Assembly: GCA_020891255.1 (NCBI GenBank)
Contig: BQFW01000014.1
Span: 2,108,001-2,172,000, forward strand
Reading direction: 5' to 3'
From: Entomortierella parvispora E1425
Taxonomy: Eukaryota > Fungi > Mortierellomycota
Length of the DNA: 64,000 nucleotides
Shown in pieces: positions 14,866-23,602 of this stretch. The translations under genes were made by a program, and so were the position numbers. Position 1 is the first letter of the stretch, and each line of letters opens with the position of its first letter. Below the pieces are notes generated by a model. It did no database searches and was not told the DNA's origin. It saw only the letters and a program-made list of their open reading frames with translations.

Positions 14866-17864
14866 ATGGATATCATCAACCCTACCACAGCTACCCTGGT
14901 GGTCCTCGTTGCAGGAGCTGGCGCTTACTACGTCTATCTGAATGTTGTCGAGCCCCAGAACAAGCTTCAGCGTGCCATCCTTGCAGAACAGGCCCAAAGA
15001 GAGCTCTTGGAGGAGCATGAGAGCCAGTCCAAGCGCGGAAGCAACAAGCAGGCCAAGAAAAAGTAAGCATGGCATCCTTTGATTCGCGTTTCCTCCTCTC
15101 CTCTCTCCGCCTTCCCTTTCTTCTTTTTTTGCTCACAAAGCGTGAGTGTAAAAAAAAAAAAAAAAAAAAAAAACACCAACGGGCGAACACAAGCATATTC
15201 CGCCCTGACAGGGAGGACAGACATCTTGGGACTCTCTCCCCTTGTTTTTTGGAAATGACGCACGGCAAATGCACCTCTTACTTTTGTGCGTTTAGCACGC
15301 GAGACGACCGTTCGCGGCATCATGCCCGATCTGCAAAGGCAGCCCGACTTGCATAGTTTCTTAATGCGCGGGAAGGAGTGTGCCTTAAGCGTGTCACTCA
15401 TCTTTAAGAGCGATCTCTGACCTTTGATCTTTTTAATCTTTGTTCTAGACCTGTCCAGGTTGCTCCACGTGCAAAGAAGGCCCCATCCATCGAGAAGGAG
15501 TCTAGCTCATCCTCATCGTCCGAGGCTGTTGACGCAAGAGTTGTGTCTTCCAACCCCTATGATCTTTTGGATGATACCCCTGTCAAGGTTGTGAGCAAGA
15601 AGGAGGCCAAGAAGACTGCTGCCAAGGCTGCCATTCCAGCCAAGGTCGCTCCTGCTCCAGTGAAGGCTGCCAGCCCTATTGTCGCACCTGTCACAGCTGC
15701 AGTAGAGGTTGCCCAAAAGATTGAGGAGCCCAAGGTGTCATCAAAGAAGACTAAAAAGGCCGCCAAGGTCGCAGAGACTATCGAGCAGCCCAAGCCTGTC
15801 GAGGCACCCAAGCCCGAGGCTTGCATTCAAGTGACCGAGTCTATTGAGATGCCCAAGCCTATTGAGGCAGTCAAGGTCGAGAAGGCCAAGGTCGAAAAGG
15901 CCAGGCCTGTCAAGGAGCAGCCCAAGGCCGCTATTGCCACACCCGTGGTGACCGAGCAGGTCGTTTCAAACCACGAGTTGGAGACTCTTCGTGCCCAGTT
16001 GCATGCCAAGGAGCAGGAGGTCGCCGCCGCAGTATCCCAGACAGAGAAGACAATTCGCCAGGTGAAGGATCTTCAGACACAGTTGGATGCCAACGCTGAG
16101 ATTGTCAAGTCAGCCAAGAAGGCTGAGCGTCTGCGTCAGTCGGTGGACTCCAAGGTTGAGTCGCTCGAGTACACCAACAAGCTCTTGTTTGAGCAATTGA
16201 GCGTCGAGAAGGAGAACACAAAGGTTGCACAGGAGCAGGCTCGCAAGGCATCGGAAAAGTCCACTGTAGTCACCCAACTTGAGCAGCAAATCCACGAGCT
16301 TCACCAGAACCGCGCCAATCTCGGATCCCAGCTGGATCACATGGACAAGGCTCACCGTGAACTTCAGCAACAGCTCATCCATGCCGAGAATGATTCCAAG
16401 CAAATGTCCCGCAGCATTCTCGAGGCAGAGCATCGCGCCGAGTCTTCATTGAGGGAGCTCCAGGAACTTCACCACAAGTGCTCTATGATCTCCATGTTGT
16501 TGTCAGAGAAGGATACTAGAATTGCCACCTTGGAGAACGATTTCAGATCATTGGAGGGTGAGCTCGAGTACGCAAAGTCCCAGGAGGAGCAGTATGCTGA
16601 AGCGGTCAGACAGGCAGAGGAGGTCTCCCACAGCCAAGCAGAGACTTTTGAGGGTGAAAAGCACTCCTTGATCGAGGAGATCGATATTCTTCGCAGTCAG
16701 CTTACCCAAGATTCCGAGAAGGTCAATGTTAAGGATGCCGAGATCAAGGCTGCCCAAGAGAGCATTAAGGATCTCACCGAGCGTCTTTCCAAGAGCCACG
16801 AGGAACACAAGAGCCTCTCCACCAAGCACGAGGAGCACGTTCATGCTTTGACGACCAAGGAATCTACCTTGTCTGCCAAGGAGTCTGAATTGGCTTCCAA
16901 GGCTGCCGAGTTGGCTGCTGCCCTCGAGAAGTTGGCTGCTGCAGAGTCCCTAATTTCCAAGGCTCAGGAGGATGTCAAGGCCTCGGAGACCAAGGTCGCC
17001 GAGCTTGAGGTTTCGCACACGAACCAGTTGAGCACTCAGCAGGAGCAATTCAGCCACCTTACCAAGGAGCTCGAGTCCTCGAACGCCCAGATCCTCACAT
17101 TGGTCGAGAAGCACGAGTCACTGAATGCCCGTATTGCCGAAATGACGGAGCGCTCGAACGAGAACACTGAGAAGGCCAAGGAGCAGTCTGCTGCCTTCCA
17201 GAAGAAAATCGAGGAGTTGCAAAGCGAGGTTGCTGCCAAGGAGTCTAGCCACAAGTCCATTTCCACCGAAAAGGAGACTGTCGCTGCTGAATTGGCCGCC
17301 CTTACCTTGTCATTCAAAGCAGCCAAGGAGGCTCACGCGACTGTCCAGAAGGAGCATGAGGTCTTGACCAAGCAGAAGGATATCCAGACCGCTGTCATTG
17401 CCGCCAAGTCTGCTAAAGCCGAGTCATTGAACAAGGAGAGGGAGGAACTCAGTGCATCGGTTGCCGCTCTTACCGAGAATGTTGCCACTTTGTCTGCCGA
17501 GGCTGTTAAGAAGGCCGAGGCCATTGTCGCCCTCGAGAAAAAGACTGAGGCTTTGAACGCCGAGTTGACTGCTGCTATTGAGGCTAAGAATGCCGTGGAT
17601 GCTGAATTGGAGGCTCTGATCGAGGCTTCGGATGTGACCAAGAGCGAGCTCGAGGCTGAGCAGGCTACTCTTCAGGCTCGTGTGATGGAGTTGGAGAAGG
17701 AGCTGGCATCAGCACAGGAAAAGGCACAGGCTGTTGTCGCAAAGAAGAAGAAGTCGAAGGGTGAAGAGGTCAAGATTGACGATGCCAAGTCGACTGTTGC
17801 TAATGGTGAGAAGAAGGAGTTTACGGTGCAGGAGCAGGAAGGCGTTGCGGTTGCAACTTTTTAG
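14866..17864 (+). CDS. N-terminally membrane-anchored, Lys-rich, long coiled-coil protein (p180/kinectin-like architecture)
   Basis: Exon 1 MDIINPTTATLVVLVAGAGAYYVYL is a TM segment, followed by KKK|gtaagc. Exon 2 (from ~15450) carries an AK/PK-rich linker and about 600 aa of heptad-rich sequence. Confidence 0.75.
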
Positions 17865-17964
17865 ATACACCCACGGCCACTGTACAGTACAGCGTCTGTC
17901 ACCAAAAGACAACATCACGTGGTTAATTTCCATGTTTACGGTTTCAGTAATTTGGGATAAAAAT

Positions 17965-20900
17965 TTAGGATAAAACTATTCCGCCTCGGATTGTGCTACG
18001 TGTTTGGTGGGGTCCAGAAGCTGGCTGGTGTTGATCGAATTTTTTTTCTGGTACAAGATATGGGCGGAATGGCGCCAAGGGGATCCTGTCGTCATCCTTG
18101 ATCGCAGAATATCCTGATATTCCTATGCATACACAGGCTTGTGTGTCTCGCGGCTGAGTCGTGTAGCCGTTCTTGTAGGCAGGACATGCCGTGTTGAAAC
18201 AGACTTTGGATCCGTTCACTGTTACTGTGTTGATGGTCCTGCCCTTTTCTGACCCCACAATTCGCCTTGAACGCGCCGAGTGGGTTTTCTCCAAGCAGAA
18301 GCAGCACCGCTGCGTTGACATGTACTCATCCGTGACTACAACAGTCCCGACCTGACGATGTTGCTTCCTGATGTTCTTACCACCTAGGCGATAATGGCCA
18401 CCAATCCTGGATCCAACACCAGTGCCAGCTGCACCCATAAATATCACATGGCGGACGACTGGGGTTGTCTTGACACAATGCGTAGGATGCTTATATGGAG
18501 CCGCGATGCTGGACTTGGATATCTCGATGCAACAACAATTGGAGCAATAGCCAGAAGCTGTGTCCACGCTTGGTTCACCACGTTTGTCTTCGGCCAATTT
18601 GTTGATGGTGTACTCCGCAGATTTTGCTCGCAAATTGCTTGCGACTTTGGCCCAGGCCCGTTTGGTCCGATGCCTACAGGTACGACGGAGTTTCACAAGG
18701 TCACGATCCCTGTTCAGCTCTCGTAGGCTGTTGTTTTCAGCAACCGAGTCGCGGATCTTGATGGCAATCTGGACGGATTCGATGGTTGAGGCCATAGCAA
18801 GAGATGCATCTGGATCCAAAAGTTTCTCCAGATCCGCCTTGGCTTGTTTGTGCTTGTCGGTCTCGAGCAAGCGCTCCCGTTTCCGACGAAGCTTGCGGCC
18901 AAAAGAAATGTCCTCTACTTGACGTGCTGTTATTCGATGAGCCTTCGGGAGTTTCATCTCTTGTGTGGCTTTTTTTGCTTGAATGCGCCTCTCCTTCGTC
19001 CAAGGTTCAGTAGTAATGTCAACCAGTTCCTCCTCTTGCTTAGAATAGTGCTCCTCCGGCGCAGCATGTTCAGTAGGCAAAAAAAGCTCCTCCGTTGTAT
19101 CAAGATCTACATGCAGGACATGAAAGATAGTTATTAGCATCAGGATTAACAATGTGTCAAAAACATTTGGACTACGGCTAATAATTTTGTAGAACTTACC
19201 TGCAAGAACTTGGAAACGGTTCATTGACTTTTCAATTCCCTCCACTGTCAAAAAGACGTTCTCCGACATCACTCGTACGCCAGGGTCCTCGCTACATATC
19301 GCCACAACCTGGATCCGTTTGGACCCTGGTAATGGTTTGAGATGTTGGTCAAATATTGGCTTGAGGTCCAATCGTTGCGGGATGTCCTCTGCTTGCGGCC
19401 ATTCCCAAGAAGGAGAGGTATGGGAGGGGTCCGTTTTTCTTGCCTTCAATTTCTTCTTCGGGTTATCCTTTGGCGCCTTTCGCTTTGCTATGGCCAGCAG
19501 TCGGTTCCAATAGTAGAGCTCTTTTTTGGCACGATCCCAGGCCATATCCAGCTGACTAAACCTCCTTTCCTTGATCCTAAGTATTGCCTGTTGTGCCTTG
19601 AGTTCAGACATTTGTTGTTTTTTCAAGGTGATGTTGCTCTCATTGTTGCTGATGGTCCAAGGGATTGCCCTGATGCCACTATTCAACGCGTTGCATTCTT
19701 TTCGAAGAGCAGCAAGCTCCTTGCGAGGGCCTTCCCGTTCCTTTGCCGTAAGCTCAACTTGTTTCGTGGCCAGTTCAACCTGATGCTCGACATCGTCCTT
19801 GGACATGCCTCTGCTTTCGAATTCCTTCCGCCAATGTGCATTTCTTCCGTTTTTTAAGCCTGAGCCCGCCTTCTTGCTTTCTTCGAACGCGCTATGGACA
19901 GGATGACGGGTATCAGACTTGGTCGTCTGCGGTCCCGATAAGTTGAGAGTATACTGGTCCACAAAGGTCATCCTACACAGTTTTTCAGATACGGACATCA
20001 GCTTTTTTTCCTCGTCTAAACTCAATTGTTGCTCATAACAGTGCATGAGGTGTGTACATACCGCATGCCAAACGTAAACCCATGTCTCTTGCATATGCCT
20101 TCAATTTTCTCGATGTCGAAAATGTTTGCAAACACTACCCGCTTTGCATTGAATGACGCAGTGCAGTCAGCAACGTTGGTCATGATGCCGGTTGCACCAT
20201 GTAGGTCATATCGGCCGGCGCTCTCTCCACTTAGCACTTGGTAGAGATGACCAGCGCCCAGCTGTAAACCGTGGATCTTTCCCGAGGAGATAGAGGGAGA
20301 GAGTCGTCTGGTGAACTCCGTTTGGCCCAACAATCGCAGCACCGCGTTGGAGATGAGTACAATTGGAGCGCGCAGGACAATGTGTGGGGTATGATGACGA
20401 TAATCCTCATCTTCAGCATCCCTCCAGCGGCGAGGAACATAGGGTCGCAGAAAATTAATGATCTTCTGTGCGACAAGGAGTTGCCGTTCAGTAAAGGAGG
20501 TTCCTTTGTATAACGAGTCCTTGATGTGATCCATGCTGAACGCTGGGGTCGGTAACGGGGACTCGAGCAACGTCCTGACGACGGTCTGCAGACGCCGAAG
20601 GGTCTTTCGACTCGGTTCCTTCTCCTTGAGGTCAGAGTTGAGAGTAATCGGACTACTTTGACTTGCATCATCTACATCCATGACCCACTCCGTATCGAGT
20701 TCGTCTGCGAAGGCTTGACTCTCAAAGAGGCACATATCGAGATCATCGTCTGAAGAATCCTCCTCCGAGAACACGTCTTCCATATTCTCATCATAGGCCA
20801 GGTCAACATCCGACGCTGAAAGTCCAGCCTCAGAGATCCTCTGAAATGACTTTTTGGATTCTTTGTCGGCTTCTGGCGGCTTTGTATCGTAGAGGGCCTT

Positions 20901-23061
20901 GAGCGGAGCAACAGAGTGATGAAGCTGATCGGTGCGACCACTCGAGTAATATTTCGCAACTTTGTTCAGAAGCTTGCTCATGGAGTGACGCCAGTGCGAT
21001 CGACTTGGTTTGTCCGAGCTGGAGTCTTTGGTGGCCTTTTGCTCGCTCTTTTTCTTGACTGCACTTGACTTCCGCTCCTTATTTGCCGCCATTCGATCCG
21101 GGGCCAACCAAGCCGATAAAAGATAGCGCAGGAGATAATCAAGAGCTTTTTCATAAATCTTCCCTTCCCACAAGTTACTGATGGCGGTTGCGCATTGACG
21201 AGTATGAGCCTCGACAACTTTGGAGTACCGGTCTTTGTGGGGGGCGATCAGACCCGGGACCTTACTGTCGATGGTCTTTGCCAACTCTAGCCATTTCGTA
21301 TGATTGCCAGACTCCTTCTCTAGCCAAGTTTTTCTGCGAGCTATTGGATCCTTTTTGAACTGTGTGTAGAGTTGGCTCAGGTGGTTTTGTGATAGAACGT
21401 TGCGGATGTCGCTATGGAGACTAGAGTTCTTGTTTTCGATGTCACTCTGCAGTGCGACTATTGGTGCCACGTTAAGTATCCTTTGTTCAGGCGGGATGAT
21501 GCATTCTGATGGTAAAATATCGCCCAAGCATAGGGTACCCTGTTGCCCTGAGAAGACACCGCCTGCTATCTGTAATTCAATAACAGATGAAGAGTATCAG
21601 CATCAACTTCGATATATGTAGTACAGTGCTACAACGTCAGACTCTGACATCCAGATTCAACTCACCAGGATCGTTCCAACTTGTGCCAGGAGGTAAAGCG
21701 ACTGTTCAACGTCCGTTAAGTGATCCTGTGCTTCTTGAAGAAGACTAATAATTCTGCTAAAGTCTTCGTGGTTCGAAAGACCGGGATGAAGGGCTTGCTT
21801 CATTGTGACCGTACATGTTCGCCATTCCTCAGTGTTCTCGTCATCGTCCGCAGTGTTGGGCTCAGGTTCCCTTCCTTCATCTGGACCACATTCCTTTCTC
21901 TTCTTTCCTTTTTCAGCCTGAAGTTGGTTGTCTGCCAGACTCTGCTCGGAATTTGTCCAGATTTCGTCAAACTGTCTTTGAACAACCTCGCACCAAACAC
22001 GAAGATTGTTGTTGCTGGTAGCTGCAGTGATGTCGCTGACGACCTGCATACGCGTCAAAGACTGGTTCCTTTGTTCGATGTATAAAGCAGCGGCATCGCT
22101 TAGGGGACCTCTTGGAAGACTCTTTAGATTGGAAAGTCGGGTTTTGAACTCTTCCTTCCCTTCGTGGTCCTCTTTCTTGATGCTTTCGCAGATATGGTCA
22201 TCAATTTTTTTCTTCAAATGCTCGATACTAAGAGATACAAACATGAACAACGTGCAGTCAGTCATTAAAAGTCTTTTTGTGAAATCACCCGCATAAGCTT
22301 CAGCATCAGTATCAGTCTTACCAAGACATTTCCAAAAATTCCAGTAACTCAGCTTTCCTAGTGTCGTCGGCGCCACTCCTTTTGATACGTAGTCTTTTGT
22401 TGGCCCGGAAAGTTGCCATGTTTGTGGGTAATATAACAGCACTGGATGAAGACATCTCTTCGATTGGTTGCGGTAAGGCCAACTCGCTCGCAGGAGCAAC
22501 AGCTAGTTCCTCCAACAAGTCTACTGTGTCCACTGGAGCGAGGGCCAGAAATTCGGAAAACTTAAGGTAGGAATCCACTCTGTGAAAGATTCCACAGACT
22601 GAGGGTGGAGACGATGCCTCTGTCCTGGGAGAGAATGTCCTCGGTGCGCCTCGGCAGGAAAACAAAAAGATATTGCAGTTGAGTCTGTCTGCCAGGTAGA
22701 CAAGCAAGAGTTGCGTTCTTGTGGGGACGATCATAGTCGAGTTGGTGCTGTTGACTGTAAGGTGCAAGTCGTACTTCCCTCCTGGCCTCAGAAAATGTTG
22801 GATTATGAAGTGGGCTAAGGAGTTGTTTGGGTCTGCAGGATTGACATCAACACGGAGTCCGCAGCTTCGAAGAGCTAGCAAAGCTTTCTCAGTCTGTTCT
22901 CTACAAGATTGTAGTCTGATGTCCTTGGCGGCATTTTCCAGACGAAGTCTAAAGTCGGATGGCGGCAGAGACCAGGAAGACCGGCGACTTTTGACAAGCT
23001 CGGTGAAGCTTTGAGGTGGGTCGGTACCAGGGCGCGCGACAATGTTGAATGAGAATGTCAT
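17965..23061 (-). CDS. Giant Fanzor1 / TnpB-like RNA-guided RuvC endonuclease, 5 exons (23061-22322, 22227-21666, 21569-20062, 19972-19200, 19106-17965), 1574 aa
   Basis: RuvC-I VVAICSEDPG (D at 19287-19285); Gly-rich GAAGTGVGSRIGG; RuvC-II TDEYMST (E at 18327-18325) directly followed by CCFC; CFNTAC Zn finger; RuvC-III PRDTQAC (D at 18147-18145). All four GT-AG introns are phase-compatible (4725 nt spliced). Confidence 0.85.
17976..18072 (-). ncRNA. Candidate Fanzor omegaRNA scaffold overlapping the 3' end of the ORF
   Basis: Minus-strand outer stem ATTCCGCC (18070-18063) / GGCGGAAT (17985-17978) enclosing an inner stem CCAGAA (18051-18046) / TTCTGG (18019-18014), ending in ...GGAATAG. Position and ~95-nt size fit TnpB/Fanzor guide RNAs. 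Confidence 0.5.
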
Positions 23062-23602
23062 GGCGATGGTATAAATGGTTGCTGATTTGGACGAGGTTCG
23101 AGTCGAGCGAGTGAATAGGTGCAATGTATGACTGACTGAATGAAAGAGAGACGGGTGAAAGCAGTGGAATGGAGCCAGGACGCGTTTTTACGTGGTCGTG
23201 GATGGATTTGGCTGACTCCTGAGCCACCACTCCTGATTTTTTCAGAGTGAGATTAATTTACTCTCAGTTAAGGGTCTGTAACACACACGCTTTTATTGCC
23301 AATGTCACATTGCGCACCAACTTCTTTTGTCAAGAGGACATCATAGTCTTATTTATTGTCTGCAGTCGCTCAAGTGTATGAAGCATTTTGAGCTTCAAGA
23401 CCGCTCTTACAAAAGATATTAGATTTTCAAACTATTTGTCGGGACTAGATGACTTGCACCATAGAAAATAAAATAATCACGTGCCCATACTTCATTTTGG
23501 TGGCGCTACGTACTTCAGCAAAAGAGAATTCGTAACGGCCTGTTGTTTGTCCATTGTCCTTCAGTCATCCTCACTGGACCCACCATTCTTGAGCAAAGAA
23601 CA

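What the first reader, a model, noticed from the sequence alone, without database searches (positions are those of the whole stretch)
17965..23061. Giant, intron-containing, catalytically intact Fanzor1 RNA-guided nuclease
Five ORF pieces splice through four canonical, phase-compatible GT-AG introns into one 1574-aa protein. Its C-terminus has the TnpB/Fanzor signature: RuvC-I D (SEDPG), the Gly-rich loop, the rearranged RuvC-II E directly before the CxxC (DEYMSTQRCCFC) typical of Fanzor1, CxxxxC and RuvC-III RD. It is more than twice the size of characterised Fanzors (SpuFz1 is about 640 aa, as I recall). There are no stops or frameshifts over 4.7 kb, suggesting recent activity or domestication. 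This is the best candidate for an undescribed eukaryotic programmable DNA-targeting system in the window.
Basis: partly seen in the sequence, partly recalled or inferred. Interest (0 to 1): 0.92.

Follow-up and report, generated by a model that had tools for sequence, protein, structure and literature searches.

The report
Giant mobile Fanzor1 nuclease gene
A 5.6-kb jumping element in this Mortierella-type soil fungus carries one spliced, expressed gene for a 1574-residue Fanzor1 (eukaryotic TnpB/Cas12-like) nuclease, about 2.5 times the usual size, with an extra N-terminal domain that looks like an OTU deubiquitinase.

Summary
Five exons (23061-17965, minus strand) join through four GT-AG introns into a 1574-aa ORF. 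A spliced 5.1-kb transcript contig from a strain about 92% identical removes these four introns.

It is mobile, not domesticated. Two related strains have an empty site here, lacking about 17866-23461, and carry the gene elsewhere. The copies share ends at 23460 and 17888. A sister subfamily has at least 8 near-identical copies in one genome.

No omega RNA, TAM or transposase was shown. Other agents noted different Fanzor fusions (FEN1-type) in this genome. I rate this a new variant of a known kind.

The parts
17888..23460 (-). Mobile element (about 5.57 kb) carrying only the giant Fanzor1 gene
   Evidence: Strains S3 (X5/X4) and S2 (X3) have an empty site joining about 17865 to about 23462 (S3) or 23572 (S2). 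Their own copies of the gene match the window up to 23460 and down to 17888, then diverge. The L001 copy's similarity starts and stops at the same points.
23432..23460 (-). Left-end terminal sequence (GGTGCAAGTCATCTAGTCCCGACA...)
   Evidence: The terminal sequence plus the TCTAT before it is 29/29 nt identical to L001 5590-5618 (element part 24/24), although this upstream region is otherwise about 75% identical. The related GGAGCAAGT core lies at the left end of the GBAus27b copies.
23461..23465 (-). 5' flanking motif TCTAT, a candidate target or TAM-like motif
   Evidence: It lies directly before the left end in the window, in L001 and in 2 of 3 GBAus27b copies. TCTA is present in the empty site of strain S3. 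This is an inference only.
22322..23061 (-). Exon 1 (aa 1-246 plus 2 nt)
22492..22944 (-). OTU-like alpha/beta domain (about aa 40-190; C53, H160, D163)
21666..22227 (-). Exon 2 (aa 247-434): helical linker with basic KGKKRKE cluster
20062..21569 (-). Exon 3 (aa 435-936): helical REC-like region, acidic disordered insert (about aa 640-735) and the N-terminal part of the WED/REC lobe
19200..19972 (-). Exon 4 (aa 937-1194): roughly 100-residue coiled-coil hairpin and RuvC-I (D1166, codon 19285-19287)
   Evidence: AF2 model of the window sequence. D is conserved in 54 of 57 aligned family members.
17965..19106 (-). Exon 5 (aa 1195-1574 plus stop): helical RuvC insert, Gly-rich strand at the canonical RuvC-II position, shifted E1455, zinc-finger TNB, RuvC-III D1515
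   Evidence: Profile alignment to SpuFz1 E541 and D606 (PMC10432273). E is conserved 119/119 and D 116/119.
18184..18306 (-). C4 zinc finger (TNB): C1462, C1465, C1497, C1502
   Evidence: Cysteines are conserved in 109-115 of about 118 members. 13 of 32 family members hit Pfam PF07282 Cas12f1-like_TNB.
17888..17940 (-). Conserved right-end block after the stop codon (...CACGTGATGTTGTCTTTTGGTGACAGACGCTGTA)
   Evidence: It is kept in L001 (26 nt at 92%), in strain S3 (a 333-nt contig matching only 17888-17930) and in X3, while sequence on both sides diverges. Its function was not shown.

Best explanation
This is the single gene of a low-copy, recently mobile DNA element of a Mortierellaceae fungus. 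The gene encodes an unusually large Fanzor1 protein, and one spliced mRNA carries all five exons. The C-terminal roughly 1190 residues form a Fanzor1 core. That core has an expanded REC/WED lobe and a RuvC nuclease with the Fanzor-type shifted glutamate (D1166, E1455, D1515). It also has a C4 zinc-finger TNB domain. By homology (inferred, not shown), the protein binds a guide RNA transcribed from the element's 3' end. It would then cut double-stranded DNA next to a short motif, which serves the element's maintenance or spread. The first roughly 380 residues are an addition specific to this family and contain an OTU-like (deubiquitinase-fold) domain of unknown activity. The element encodes no recognisable transposase, so it probably moves with help in trans or by a route not yet defined.
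For: Gene model and a single spliced transcript.
Homology: the family profile hits SpuFz1 (E 7.5e-4) and PpFz1 on the E..TS..CxxC..C..C..RD stretch, and 13 of 32 members hit PF07282.
Selection: the triad and zinc cysteines are nearly invariant in up to 119 relatives. 29 of 38 listed strain differences in exon 5 and 23 of 34 in exon 3 fall on third codon positions.
Mobility: two strains have empty sites and carry copies elsewhere with the same ends. The window, L001 and L002 share no synteny. Mortierella sp. GBAus27b has at least 8 copies at 90% identity or more, and four loci are 98-98.7% identical over 5.4 kb.
Literature: most Fz1 proteins are 600-700 aa (PMC11423790), and Fanzors carry the shifted glutamate (PMC10530073).
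Against: No guide RNA was found. The 235 nt at the window's 3' end fold no better than shuffles (z +0.65). The two-sequence consensus structure is weak, and Rfam gives nothing.
The window protein alone hits no Pfam, NCBIfam or PDB sequence.
The D-to-E spacer (286-291 aa) slightly exceeds the published Fanzor1 motif ranges, and the N of RDxxxxxN is C here.
The equivalence of the RuvC-I Asp with SpuFz1 D383 rests on strand position in the model, not on a residue-level alignment.
No transposase, TIR or TSD was identified.
The RNA evidence comes from a related strain, not the window's own.
Confidence: 0.78

Rival explanations
1. It is a domesticated Fanzor-derived host gene. On this reading it has a fixed locus and a cellular function, and is no longer part of a mobile element.
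For: It has a long intact ORF under purifying selection. It appears single-copy in the related strain, where contig depth is about 500 against about 590 for the neighbouring gene. No transposase lies in or beside it.
Against: Two strains of the same species label have an empty site at exactly this place and carry the gene elsewhere with different flanks. The three full-length loci compared share no synteny. The terminal sequences are better conserved than the coding DNA. A sister subfamily is multi-copy at 98% identity.
Confidence: 0.07
2. It has a Fanzor-like fold but no longer acts as an RNA-guided nuclease. For example, it could be a guide-independent nuclease or a DNA/RNA-binding factor whose main activity lies in the added N-terminal domain.
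For: No significantly structured RNA is detectable at the window's 3' end. The architecture is very unusual, with about 940 residues before the part folded from the window. CrFNuc-1 in PMC10530073 formed an RNP but showed no cleavage, so not every Fanzor tested is active.
Against: The catalytic D/E/D residues and the zinc finger are nearly invariant across a family diverged to 25-30% identity. The REC/WED lobe that holds the guide-target duplex in PpFz1 is retained. The GBAus27b sister subfamily has a significantly structured 3' end (z -2.64, 0 of 200 shuffles) that ends in a hairpin at the shared element boundary.
Confidence: 0.13
3. The N-terminal and C-terminal halves are two separate genes, as the E. 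parvispora annotation has it (595 aa plus 785 aa), so the 'giant' size is an artefact.
For: The public annotation of the related locus L001 calls two genes.
Against: One transcript contig spans all five exons with the frame kept. The spliced protein aligns colinearly over aa 1-1570 to L001. Independent annotations in M. alpina, Actinomortierella, Mortierella sp. AM989 and GBAus27b call single proteins of 1543-1823 aa that are colinear from about aa 30 to the end.
Confidence: 0.02

Closest known systems
Fanzor1 nucleases with solved structures: SpuFz1 (8GKH/9CEY, 638 aa) and PpFz1 (9CF0/9CF1)
   Different: It is 1574 aa, against 600-700 aa for most Fz1. It has about 380 extra N-terminal residues with an OTU-like domain. 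It has an acidic disordered insert of about 95 aa, a coiled-coil hairpin of about 100 residues before RuvC-I, and a longer RuvC-I to RuvC-II spacer (286-291 aa). The residue after RDxxxxx is C, not N. Sequence identity is only 12-17%. Its omega RNA and TAM are unknown.
MCi-2 Fanzor1 elements of Mucor circinelloides (Bao and Jurka 2013, PMC3627910)
   Same: Both occur in Mucoromycota. Both have a roughly 6-kb conserved 3' part encoding the Fanzor and a sharply defined 3' end. Both have a variable 5' region (L001 and the GBAus27b copies here), no TIRs and no transposase of their own.
   Different: MCi-2 has 11-12-bp TSDs (ATAATTNNNN), and none was seen here. I made no sequence comparison with MCi-2, so relatedness is untested.
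Bacterial IS200/IS605 and IS607 TnpB with omega RNA
   Same: The RuvC-TNB core is homologous. By analogy, a guide would be derived from the element's right end, and a short motif would lie 5' of the left end (TCTAT here).
   Different: The element has no TnpA. The gene is spliced and eukaryotic. The protein is about 4 times larger, and the catalytic glutamate is shifted.
OTU-family cysteine proteases and deubiquitinases (yeast Otu2, OTUD3, nairovirus vOTU)
   Same: The N-terminal domain has a similar predicted fold, with 97-110 of about 155 residues aligned. A Cys lies at a helix N-terminus (C53) and a His in a late beta-strand (H160-x-x-D163).

Membership tests
Fanzor1 (eukaryotic TnpB homologues) | Bao-Jurka motif D-X(125,275)-[TS][TS]-X-X-C4 zinc finger-X(5,50)-RD (PMC3627910) | tested here: met
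   D1166 ... S1458 T1459 Q R C1462 xx C1465 ... C1497 xxxx C1502 ... R1514 D1515 are all present and in order. The first spacer is 291 aa, 16 over the published empirical range.
Fanzor1 (eukaryotic TnpB homologues) | Fanzor1 expression DPG-x(120,280)-E-x6-[CH]xxC-x(10,65)-C-x(5,50)-RD(xxxxxN) (bioRxiv 10.1101/2023.08.09.552727) | tested here: inconclusive
   DPG, Ex6CxxC, C and RD are all present. Other family members do have N.
Fanzor1 (eukaryotic TnpB homologues) | Canonical RuvC-II Glu replaced by Gly or Pro, with an alternative Glu about 45 residues downstream just before the zinc finger (PMC10530073) | tested here: met
   The strand RHVIFMGAAG carries Gly at the canonical place. E1455 lies about 40 residues later and aligns to SpuFz1 E541 in the profile alignment.
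Fanzor1 (eukaryotic TnpB homologues) | RuvC plus TNB fold like solved Fanzor1 | tested here: met
Fanzor1 (eukaryotic TnpB homologues) | WED/REC lobe N-terminal to RuvC | tested here: met
Fanzor1 (eukaryotic TnpB homologues) | Omega RNA encoded at or overlapping the 3' end, with the guide taken from the flank | tested here: inconclusive
   A conserved right-end block exists. However, the fold z-score is +0.65, covariation from two sequences is weak, and no small-RNA data were available. The sister subfamily's 3' end has z -2.64.
Fanzor1 (eukaryotic TnpB homologues) | RNA-guided, TAM-dependent double-strand DNA cleavage | not testable with these tools
   This needs biochemistry.
Fanzor1 (eukaryotic TnpB homologues) | Carried by a eukaryotic mobile element | tested here: met
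   Two strains have empty sites, the copies share ends, and a sister subfamily is multi-copy.
OTU cysteine protease / deubiquitinase clan | OTU fold | tested here: inconclusive
OTU cysteine protease / deubiquitinase clan | Conserved catalytic Cys and His (plus Asp/Asn) | tested here: inconclusive
   The window has C53 and H160-R-V-D163. His is kept in 6 of 8 family sequences and Asp in 7 of 8, but Cys in only 3-4 of 7.
OTU cysteine protease / deubiquitinase clan | Match to the OTU sequence profile (PF02338) | tested here: not met
   No Pfam hit for any of 9 members at E up to 10. No PDB hit with the domain profile.
Helitron (as the carrier element) | 5' TC, 3' hairpin followed by CTRR, insertion at A|T, RepHel protein | tested here: not met
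   In the window, the 5' end can be read as TC(TAT), but the right end stops at ...TGTA with no CTRR, and there is no RepHel. The GBAus27b sister elements do end in hairpin-11 nt-CTAG|T and start with TC. One of them lies just downstream of a PIF1-helicase ORF fragment.
IS200/IS605 or IS607-type element | TnpA (Y1 HUH or serine recombinase) beside TnpB | tested here: not met
   There is no second ORF in 17888-23460, and no Pfam hit other than the Fanzor part.

The most novel reading that the evidence does not exclude
The N-terminal OTU-like domain is an active ubiquitin (or ubiquitin-like) protease that is physically coupled to the RNA-guided nuclease. It could, for example, strip ubiquitin marks from chromatin or repair factors at the cut, or protect the enzyme from degradation, and so steer repair towards copying the element. 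That would make this the first natural RNA-guided nuclease fused to a ubiquitin-system enzyme, and its single protein might be all that the element needs for spread by homing.
Probability: 0.15. Interest if true: 0.8.

Novelty: new variant of a known kind. Interest (0 to 1): 0.6.

Why it matters
Fanzors are the only known eukaryotic RNA-guided DNA nucleases, and the characterised ones have 600-900 residues. This family shows that the scaffold tolerates a doubling in size. It keeps its catalytic centre under selection, is transcribed and spliced as one mRNA, and still moves between loci within a species.

The conserved additions could reveal how such nucleases are adapted to eukaryotic chromatin and repair. 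These additions are the OTU-like domain, the long coiled-coil hairpin and the expanded REC lobe.

The clean empty-versus-filled site and the conserved ends give a defined system in which to ask how transposase-less Fanzor elements move.

For genome editing, the size is a drawback, but the accessory domains may be of interest.

Tried and rejected
Single-sequence searches of all four ORF pieces against Pfam, NCBIfam and PDB gave nothing. Homology appeared only with a family profile.

Inverted and direct repeat searches around the gene found only poly-A/T runs and no TIRs.

No RNA run was listed for the window's own strain. The RNA evidence came from a same-label strain found with kind 'any'.

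I looked for synteny with the E. parvispora and M. alpina loci and found none.

I tested the 3' end as a structured omega RNA by MFE z-score, two-sequence alifold and Rfam. There was no support in the window.

I looked for TSDs at the window, L001 and GBAus27b insertions and found none that were convincing.

I considered a Helitron carrier. The termini fit the GBAus27b sister subfamily but not the window.

I considered whether the 5' regions of L001 or L003 encode a transposase. They hold no ORF of note.

I tested the OTU idea at sequence level with Pfam on 9 members and a PDB profile search. Both were negative.

The left-end motif search in the M. alpina locus L002 found no left end in the right orientation.

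I did not verify which species the window comes from.
Full report
**Observation**

The minus strand between 23061 and 17965 contains four long ORF pieces. These join through four GT..AG introns (22321-22228, 21665-21570, 20061-19973, 19199-19107; 94, 96, 89 and 93 nt). The result is a 4725-nt reading frame of 1574 codons with a single terminal stop.

The splicing is supported by RNA:
- No RNA run was listed for the window's own strain. A search of any kind found runs under the same species label.
- In one of them (X10), a 5153-nt contig about 92% identical to the window covers 23131-17980.
- Its joints are exactly at 22227/22322, 21569/21666 and 19971/20061.
- At intron 4 the joint is 19097/19202, with 14 diverged letters that account for the exon ends.
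- DNA contigs of the same sample (X5, X4) retain the introns.

So one mRNA carries all five exons, at least in that close relative. The copy in the Entomortierella parvispora assembly (L001) has introns 1-4 at the same positions, although its public annotation splits the gene into products of 595 and 785 aa.

**What it is**

Alone, none of the pieces hits Pfam, NCBIfam or any PDB sequence. An exhaustive HMMER search of 1.84 billion representatives gave 402 relatives at E up to 1e-3. Many of them are 1300-1800 aa long. The named ones all come from Mortierellaceae: Mortierella alpina (three divergent members), Actinomortierella ambigua, Linnemannia hyalina, M. antarctica, Gryganskiella and Mortierella spp..

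A 32-sequence profile of the C-terminal part has as its only significant PDB hit the Fanzor of Spizellomyces punctatus (8GKH, E 7.5e-4). Next comes Parasitella parasitica Fanzor 1 (9CF0, E 0.12). The alignment runs over tdEyrTSktCxxC ... hGxxxCxNxxC ... RD. After subtracting the 394-residue MBP offset of that chain, the family's Glu and Asp fall on SpuFz1 E541 and D606. Saito et al. report these as metal-coordinating catalytic residues, together with D383 (PMC10432273). Thirteen of the 32 members individually hit Pfam PF07282, Cas12f1-like TNB.

I folded the window's own sequence from the start of exon 4 to the end, with 150 relatives as the alignment. Intron 4 is read through in frame in this sequence. 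The AlphaFold2 model has mean pLDDT 85 and pTM 0.84, and the intron-coded loop is disordered.
- The seven best Foldseek PDB matches are all Fanzor1 structures (SpuFz, PpFz, GtFz; best E 3.5e-4, probability 1.0). Cas12 proteins follow.

The putative triad is D1166 (ICSEDPG), E1455 (DEYMSTQRCCFC) and D1515 (PRD). These residues are conserved in 54/57, 119/119 and 116/119 aligned relatives, and the four zinc cysteines in 109-115 of about 118. At the canonical RuvC-II position the strand reads FMGAAG, and the Glu lies about 40 residues downstream. This is the rearrangement described for Fanzors (PMC10530073). The DPG motif of the published Fanzor1 expression is present. The D-to-E spacer (286-291 aa) is slightly longer than the published ranges.

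Differences between the window and the 92%-identical strain fall mostly on third codon positions: 29 of 38 listed in exon 5 and 23 of 34 listed in exon 3. This indicates purifying selection on the protein.

**Where the size comes from**

The N-terminal 940 residues are conserved and colinear across the family. For example, aa 32-940 align to residues 28-933 of an 1823-aa Mortierella protein. No Pfam domain is found in them.

Because the window's exons 1-3 cannot be given as one reference, I folded residues 1-1000 of the colinear family member P0007 (Actinomortierella). The 32-row alignment included the window's exons. The model has pLDDT 70.6, with confident blocks at 80-230, 400-700 and 800-990.
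- An acidic disordered segment (window aa about 640-735) interrupts this lobe.
- A coiled-coil hairpin of about 100 residues follows (model 1, helices 58-101 and 111-163).
- AlphaFold DB clusters show the same helical region in uncharacterised proteins of about 600-1150 aa (E down to 4e-16).

The truly additional part is the first roughly 380 residues. Evidence on its alpha/beta domain is as follows:
- An ESM-Atlas OTU cluster matches with TM 0.46.
- By language-model features of the window's own residues 1-190, 74 of the 100 nearest named clusters carry OTU-clan families, though at low scores.
- The window has a Cys at a helix start (C53) and a conserved FFHxVD (H160, D163).
- The Cys is missing in several relatives, and no sequence profile supports OTU membership.

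I treat the OTU-like fold as likely (about 0.65) and enzymatic activity as open.

**Mobility**

The gene is not at a conserved locus. Neither the E. parvispora locus L001 nor the M. alpina locus L002 shares any flanking gene with the 64-kb window.

Laying contigs at 85% likeness gave the decisive result. In strain S3, a 15-kb DNA contig runs from the neighbouring coiled-coil gene (up to 17865) directly to 23462, with 14 other letters between, and then on into the next gene. This is an empty site lacking 5596 nt. A second strain (X3) is also empty (17862 to 23572).

Both strains carry the Fanzor gene elsewhere. Their copies match the window up to 23460 and down to 17888, then continue into unrelated sequence.

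L001 shows the same limits:
- Its left end, together with the preceding TCTAT, is 29/29 nt identical to the window's (TCTAT|GGTGCAAGTCATCTAGTCCCGACA). The upstream region beyond that is only about 75% identical.
- That left end lies 1.85 kb upstream of the ATG, against 0.4 kb in the window, so the 5' region is variable.
- A right-end block at window 17888-17940 is conserved in L001, S3 and X3, while its surroundings diverge.

The element is therefore about 17888-23460, and the Fanzor gene is its only ORF. I found no TIRs and no convincing TSD.

TCTAT directly precedes the left end in the window, in L001 and in two of three copies of a sister subfamily. TCTA is present in the empty site. That makes it a candidate target or TAM-like motif, which is an inference.

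The sister subfamily in Mortierella sp. GBAus27b has at least 8 full-length copies at 90% protein identity or more on different contigs.
- Four loci are 98-98.7% identical over 5.4 kb.
- They share a sharp common 3' end 163 nt after the stop, which ends in a hairpin followed by CTAG|T.
- Their 5' regions are modular.
- Their 3' region is significantly structured (z -2.64).
- One copy lies just downstream of a PIF1-helicase ORF fragment.

These features are Helitron-like and recall the unclassified MCi-2 Fanzor elements of Mucor (PMC3627910). The window's right end does not fit a Helitron terminus.

**How it most likely works**

Shown here: a spliced, expressed, selectively maintained protein with a Fanzor1 fold and a complete catalytic set, on a polymorphic insertion with conserved ends.

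Inferred from the family (PMC10432273, PMC10530073, PMC11423790): it binds an RNA from the element's right end, recognises a short motif and cuts DNA, which supports the element's persistence or spread.

Not shown: the RNA, the motif, cleavage, the means of transposition and the role of the N-terminal domain. The window's 3' end gives no thermodynamic or covariation signal for a structured RNA, and Rfam has no match.

**Comparison and novelty**

Fanzor1 is known to be widespread in early-diverging fungi, and a 677-aa Mortierella protein is in Saito et al.'s table. Published Fz1 proteins are mostly 600-700 aa. I found no paper that mentions Fanzor together with Mortierella, and the search for Fanzor with OTU or deubiquitinase listed none among its top-ranked papers.

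Other agents of this scan report different fused Fanzors (FEN1/XPG-type) in the same genome, and name the genome as E. parvispora. I did not verify either point. If the species is right, L001 is a paralogue in the same genome. This is a new, unusually large variant of a known kind, not a new kind of system.

Noticed in passing
L003:9184-9346, also L004-L006: The GBAus27b sister elements end in a 7-bp hairpin (CCCGTGA GCAA TCACGGG), 11 nt, then CTAG followed by host T. They begin with TC. These termini are Helitron-like. The last 197 nt fold with z -2.64.
   Followed up: partly
L006:763-1875: An ORF encoding the C-terminal part of a PIF1-like helicase (PF05970 E 1.5e-30, Pif1_2B E 4.8e-20) ends about 90 nt before the left end of a giant-Fanzor element. 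It may be a Helitron RepHel remnant or just a neighbouring insertion.
   Followed up: partly
L001:7441-12489: The public annotation of the E. parvispora copy splits one colinear 1570-aa reading frame into two genes (595 and 785 aa). This is probably an annotation error.
   Followed up: yes
window 17913-17922 and 23476-23484: An ATCACGTG (E-box / Cbf1-type) motif occurs in the conserved right-end block and again in the host DNA just outside the left end. Its meaning is unknown.
   Followed up: no
window 22514-22526: The related strain S3 has 77 letters in place of 11 here, an in-frame +66 nt indel in exon 1. It is present in both its DNA and RNA contigs.
   Followed up: no
window 17980 and below (strain S3 transcript): The S3 transcript contig continues 247 nt past 17980, while the right end lies only about 92 nt further on. 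The mRNA may therefore read through the element's end into flanking DNA, which a flank-derived guide would require. It could also be a contig artefact.
   Followed up: no
window 15543-17864 (+): The convergent neighbour is a long coiled-coil protein whose stop codon lies only about 24 nt from the element's right end. The element inserted into its 3' UTR region.
   Followed up: partly
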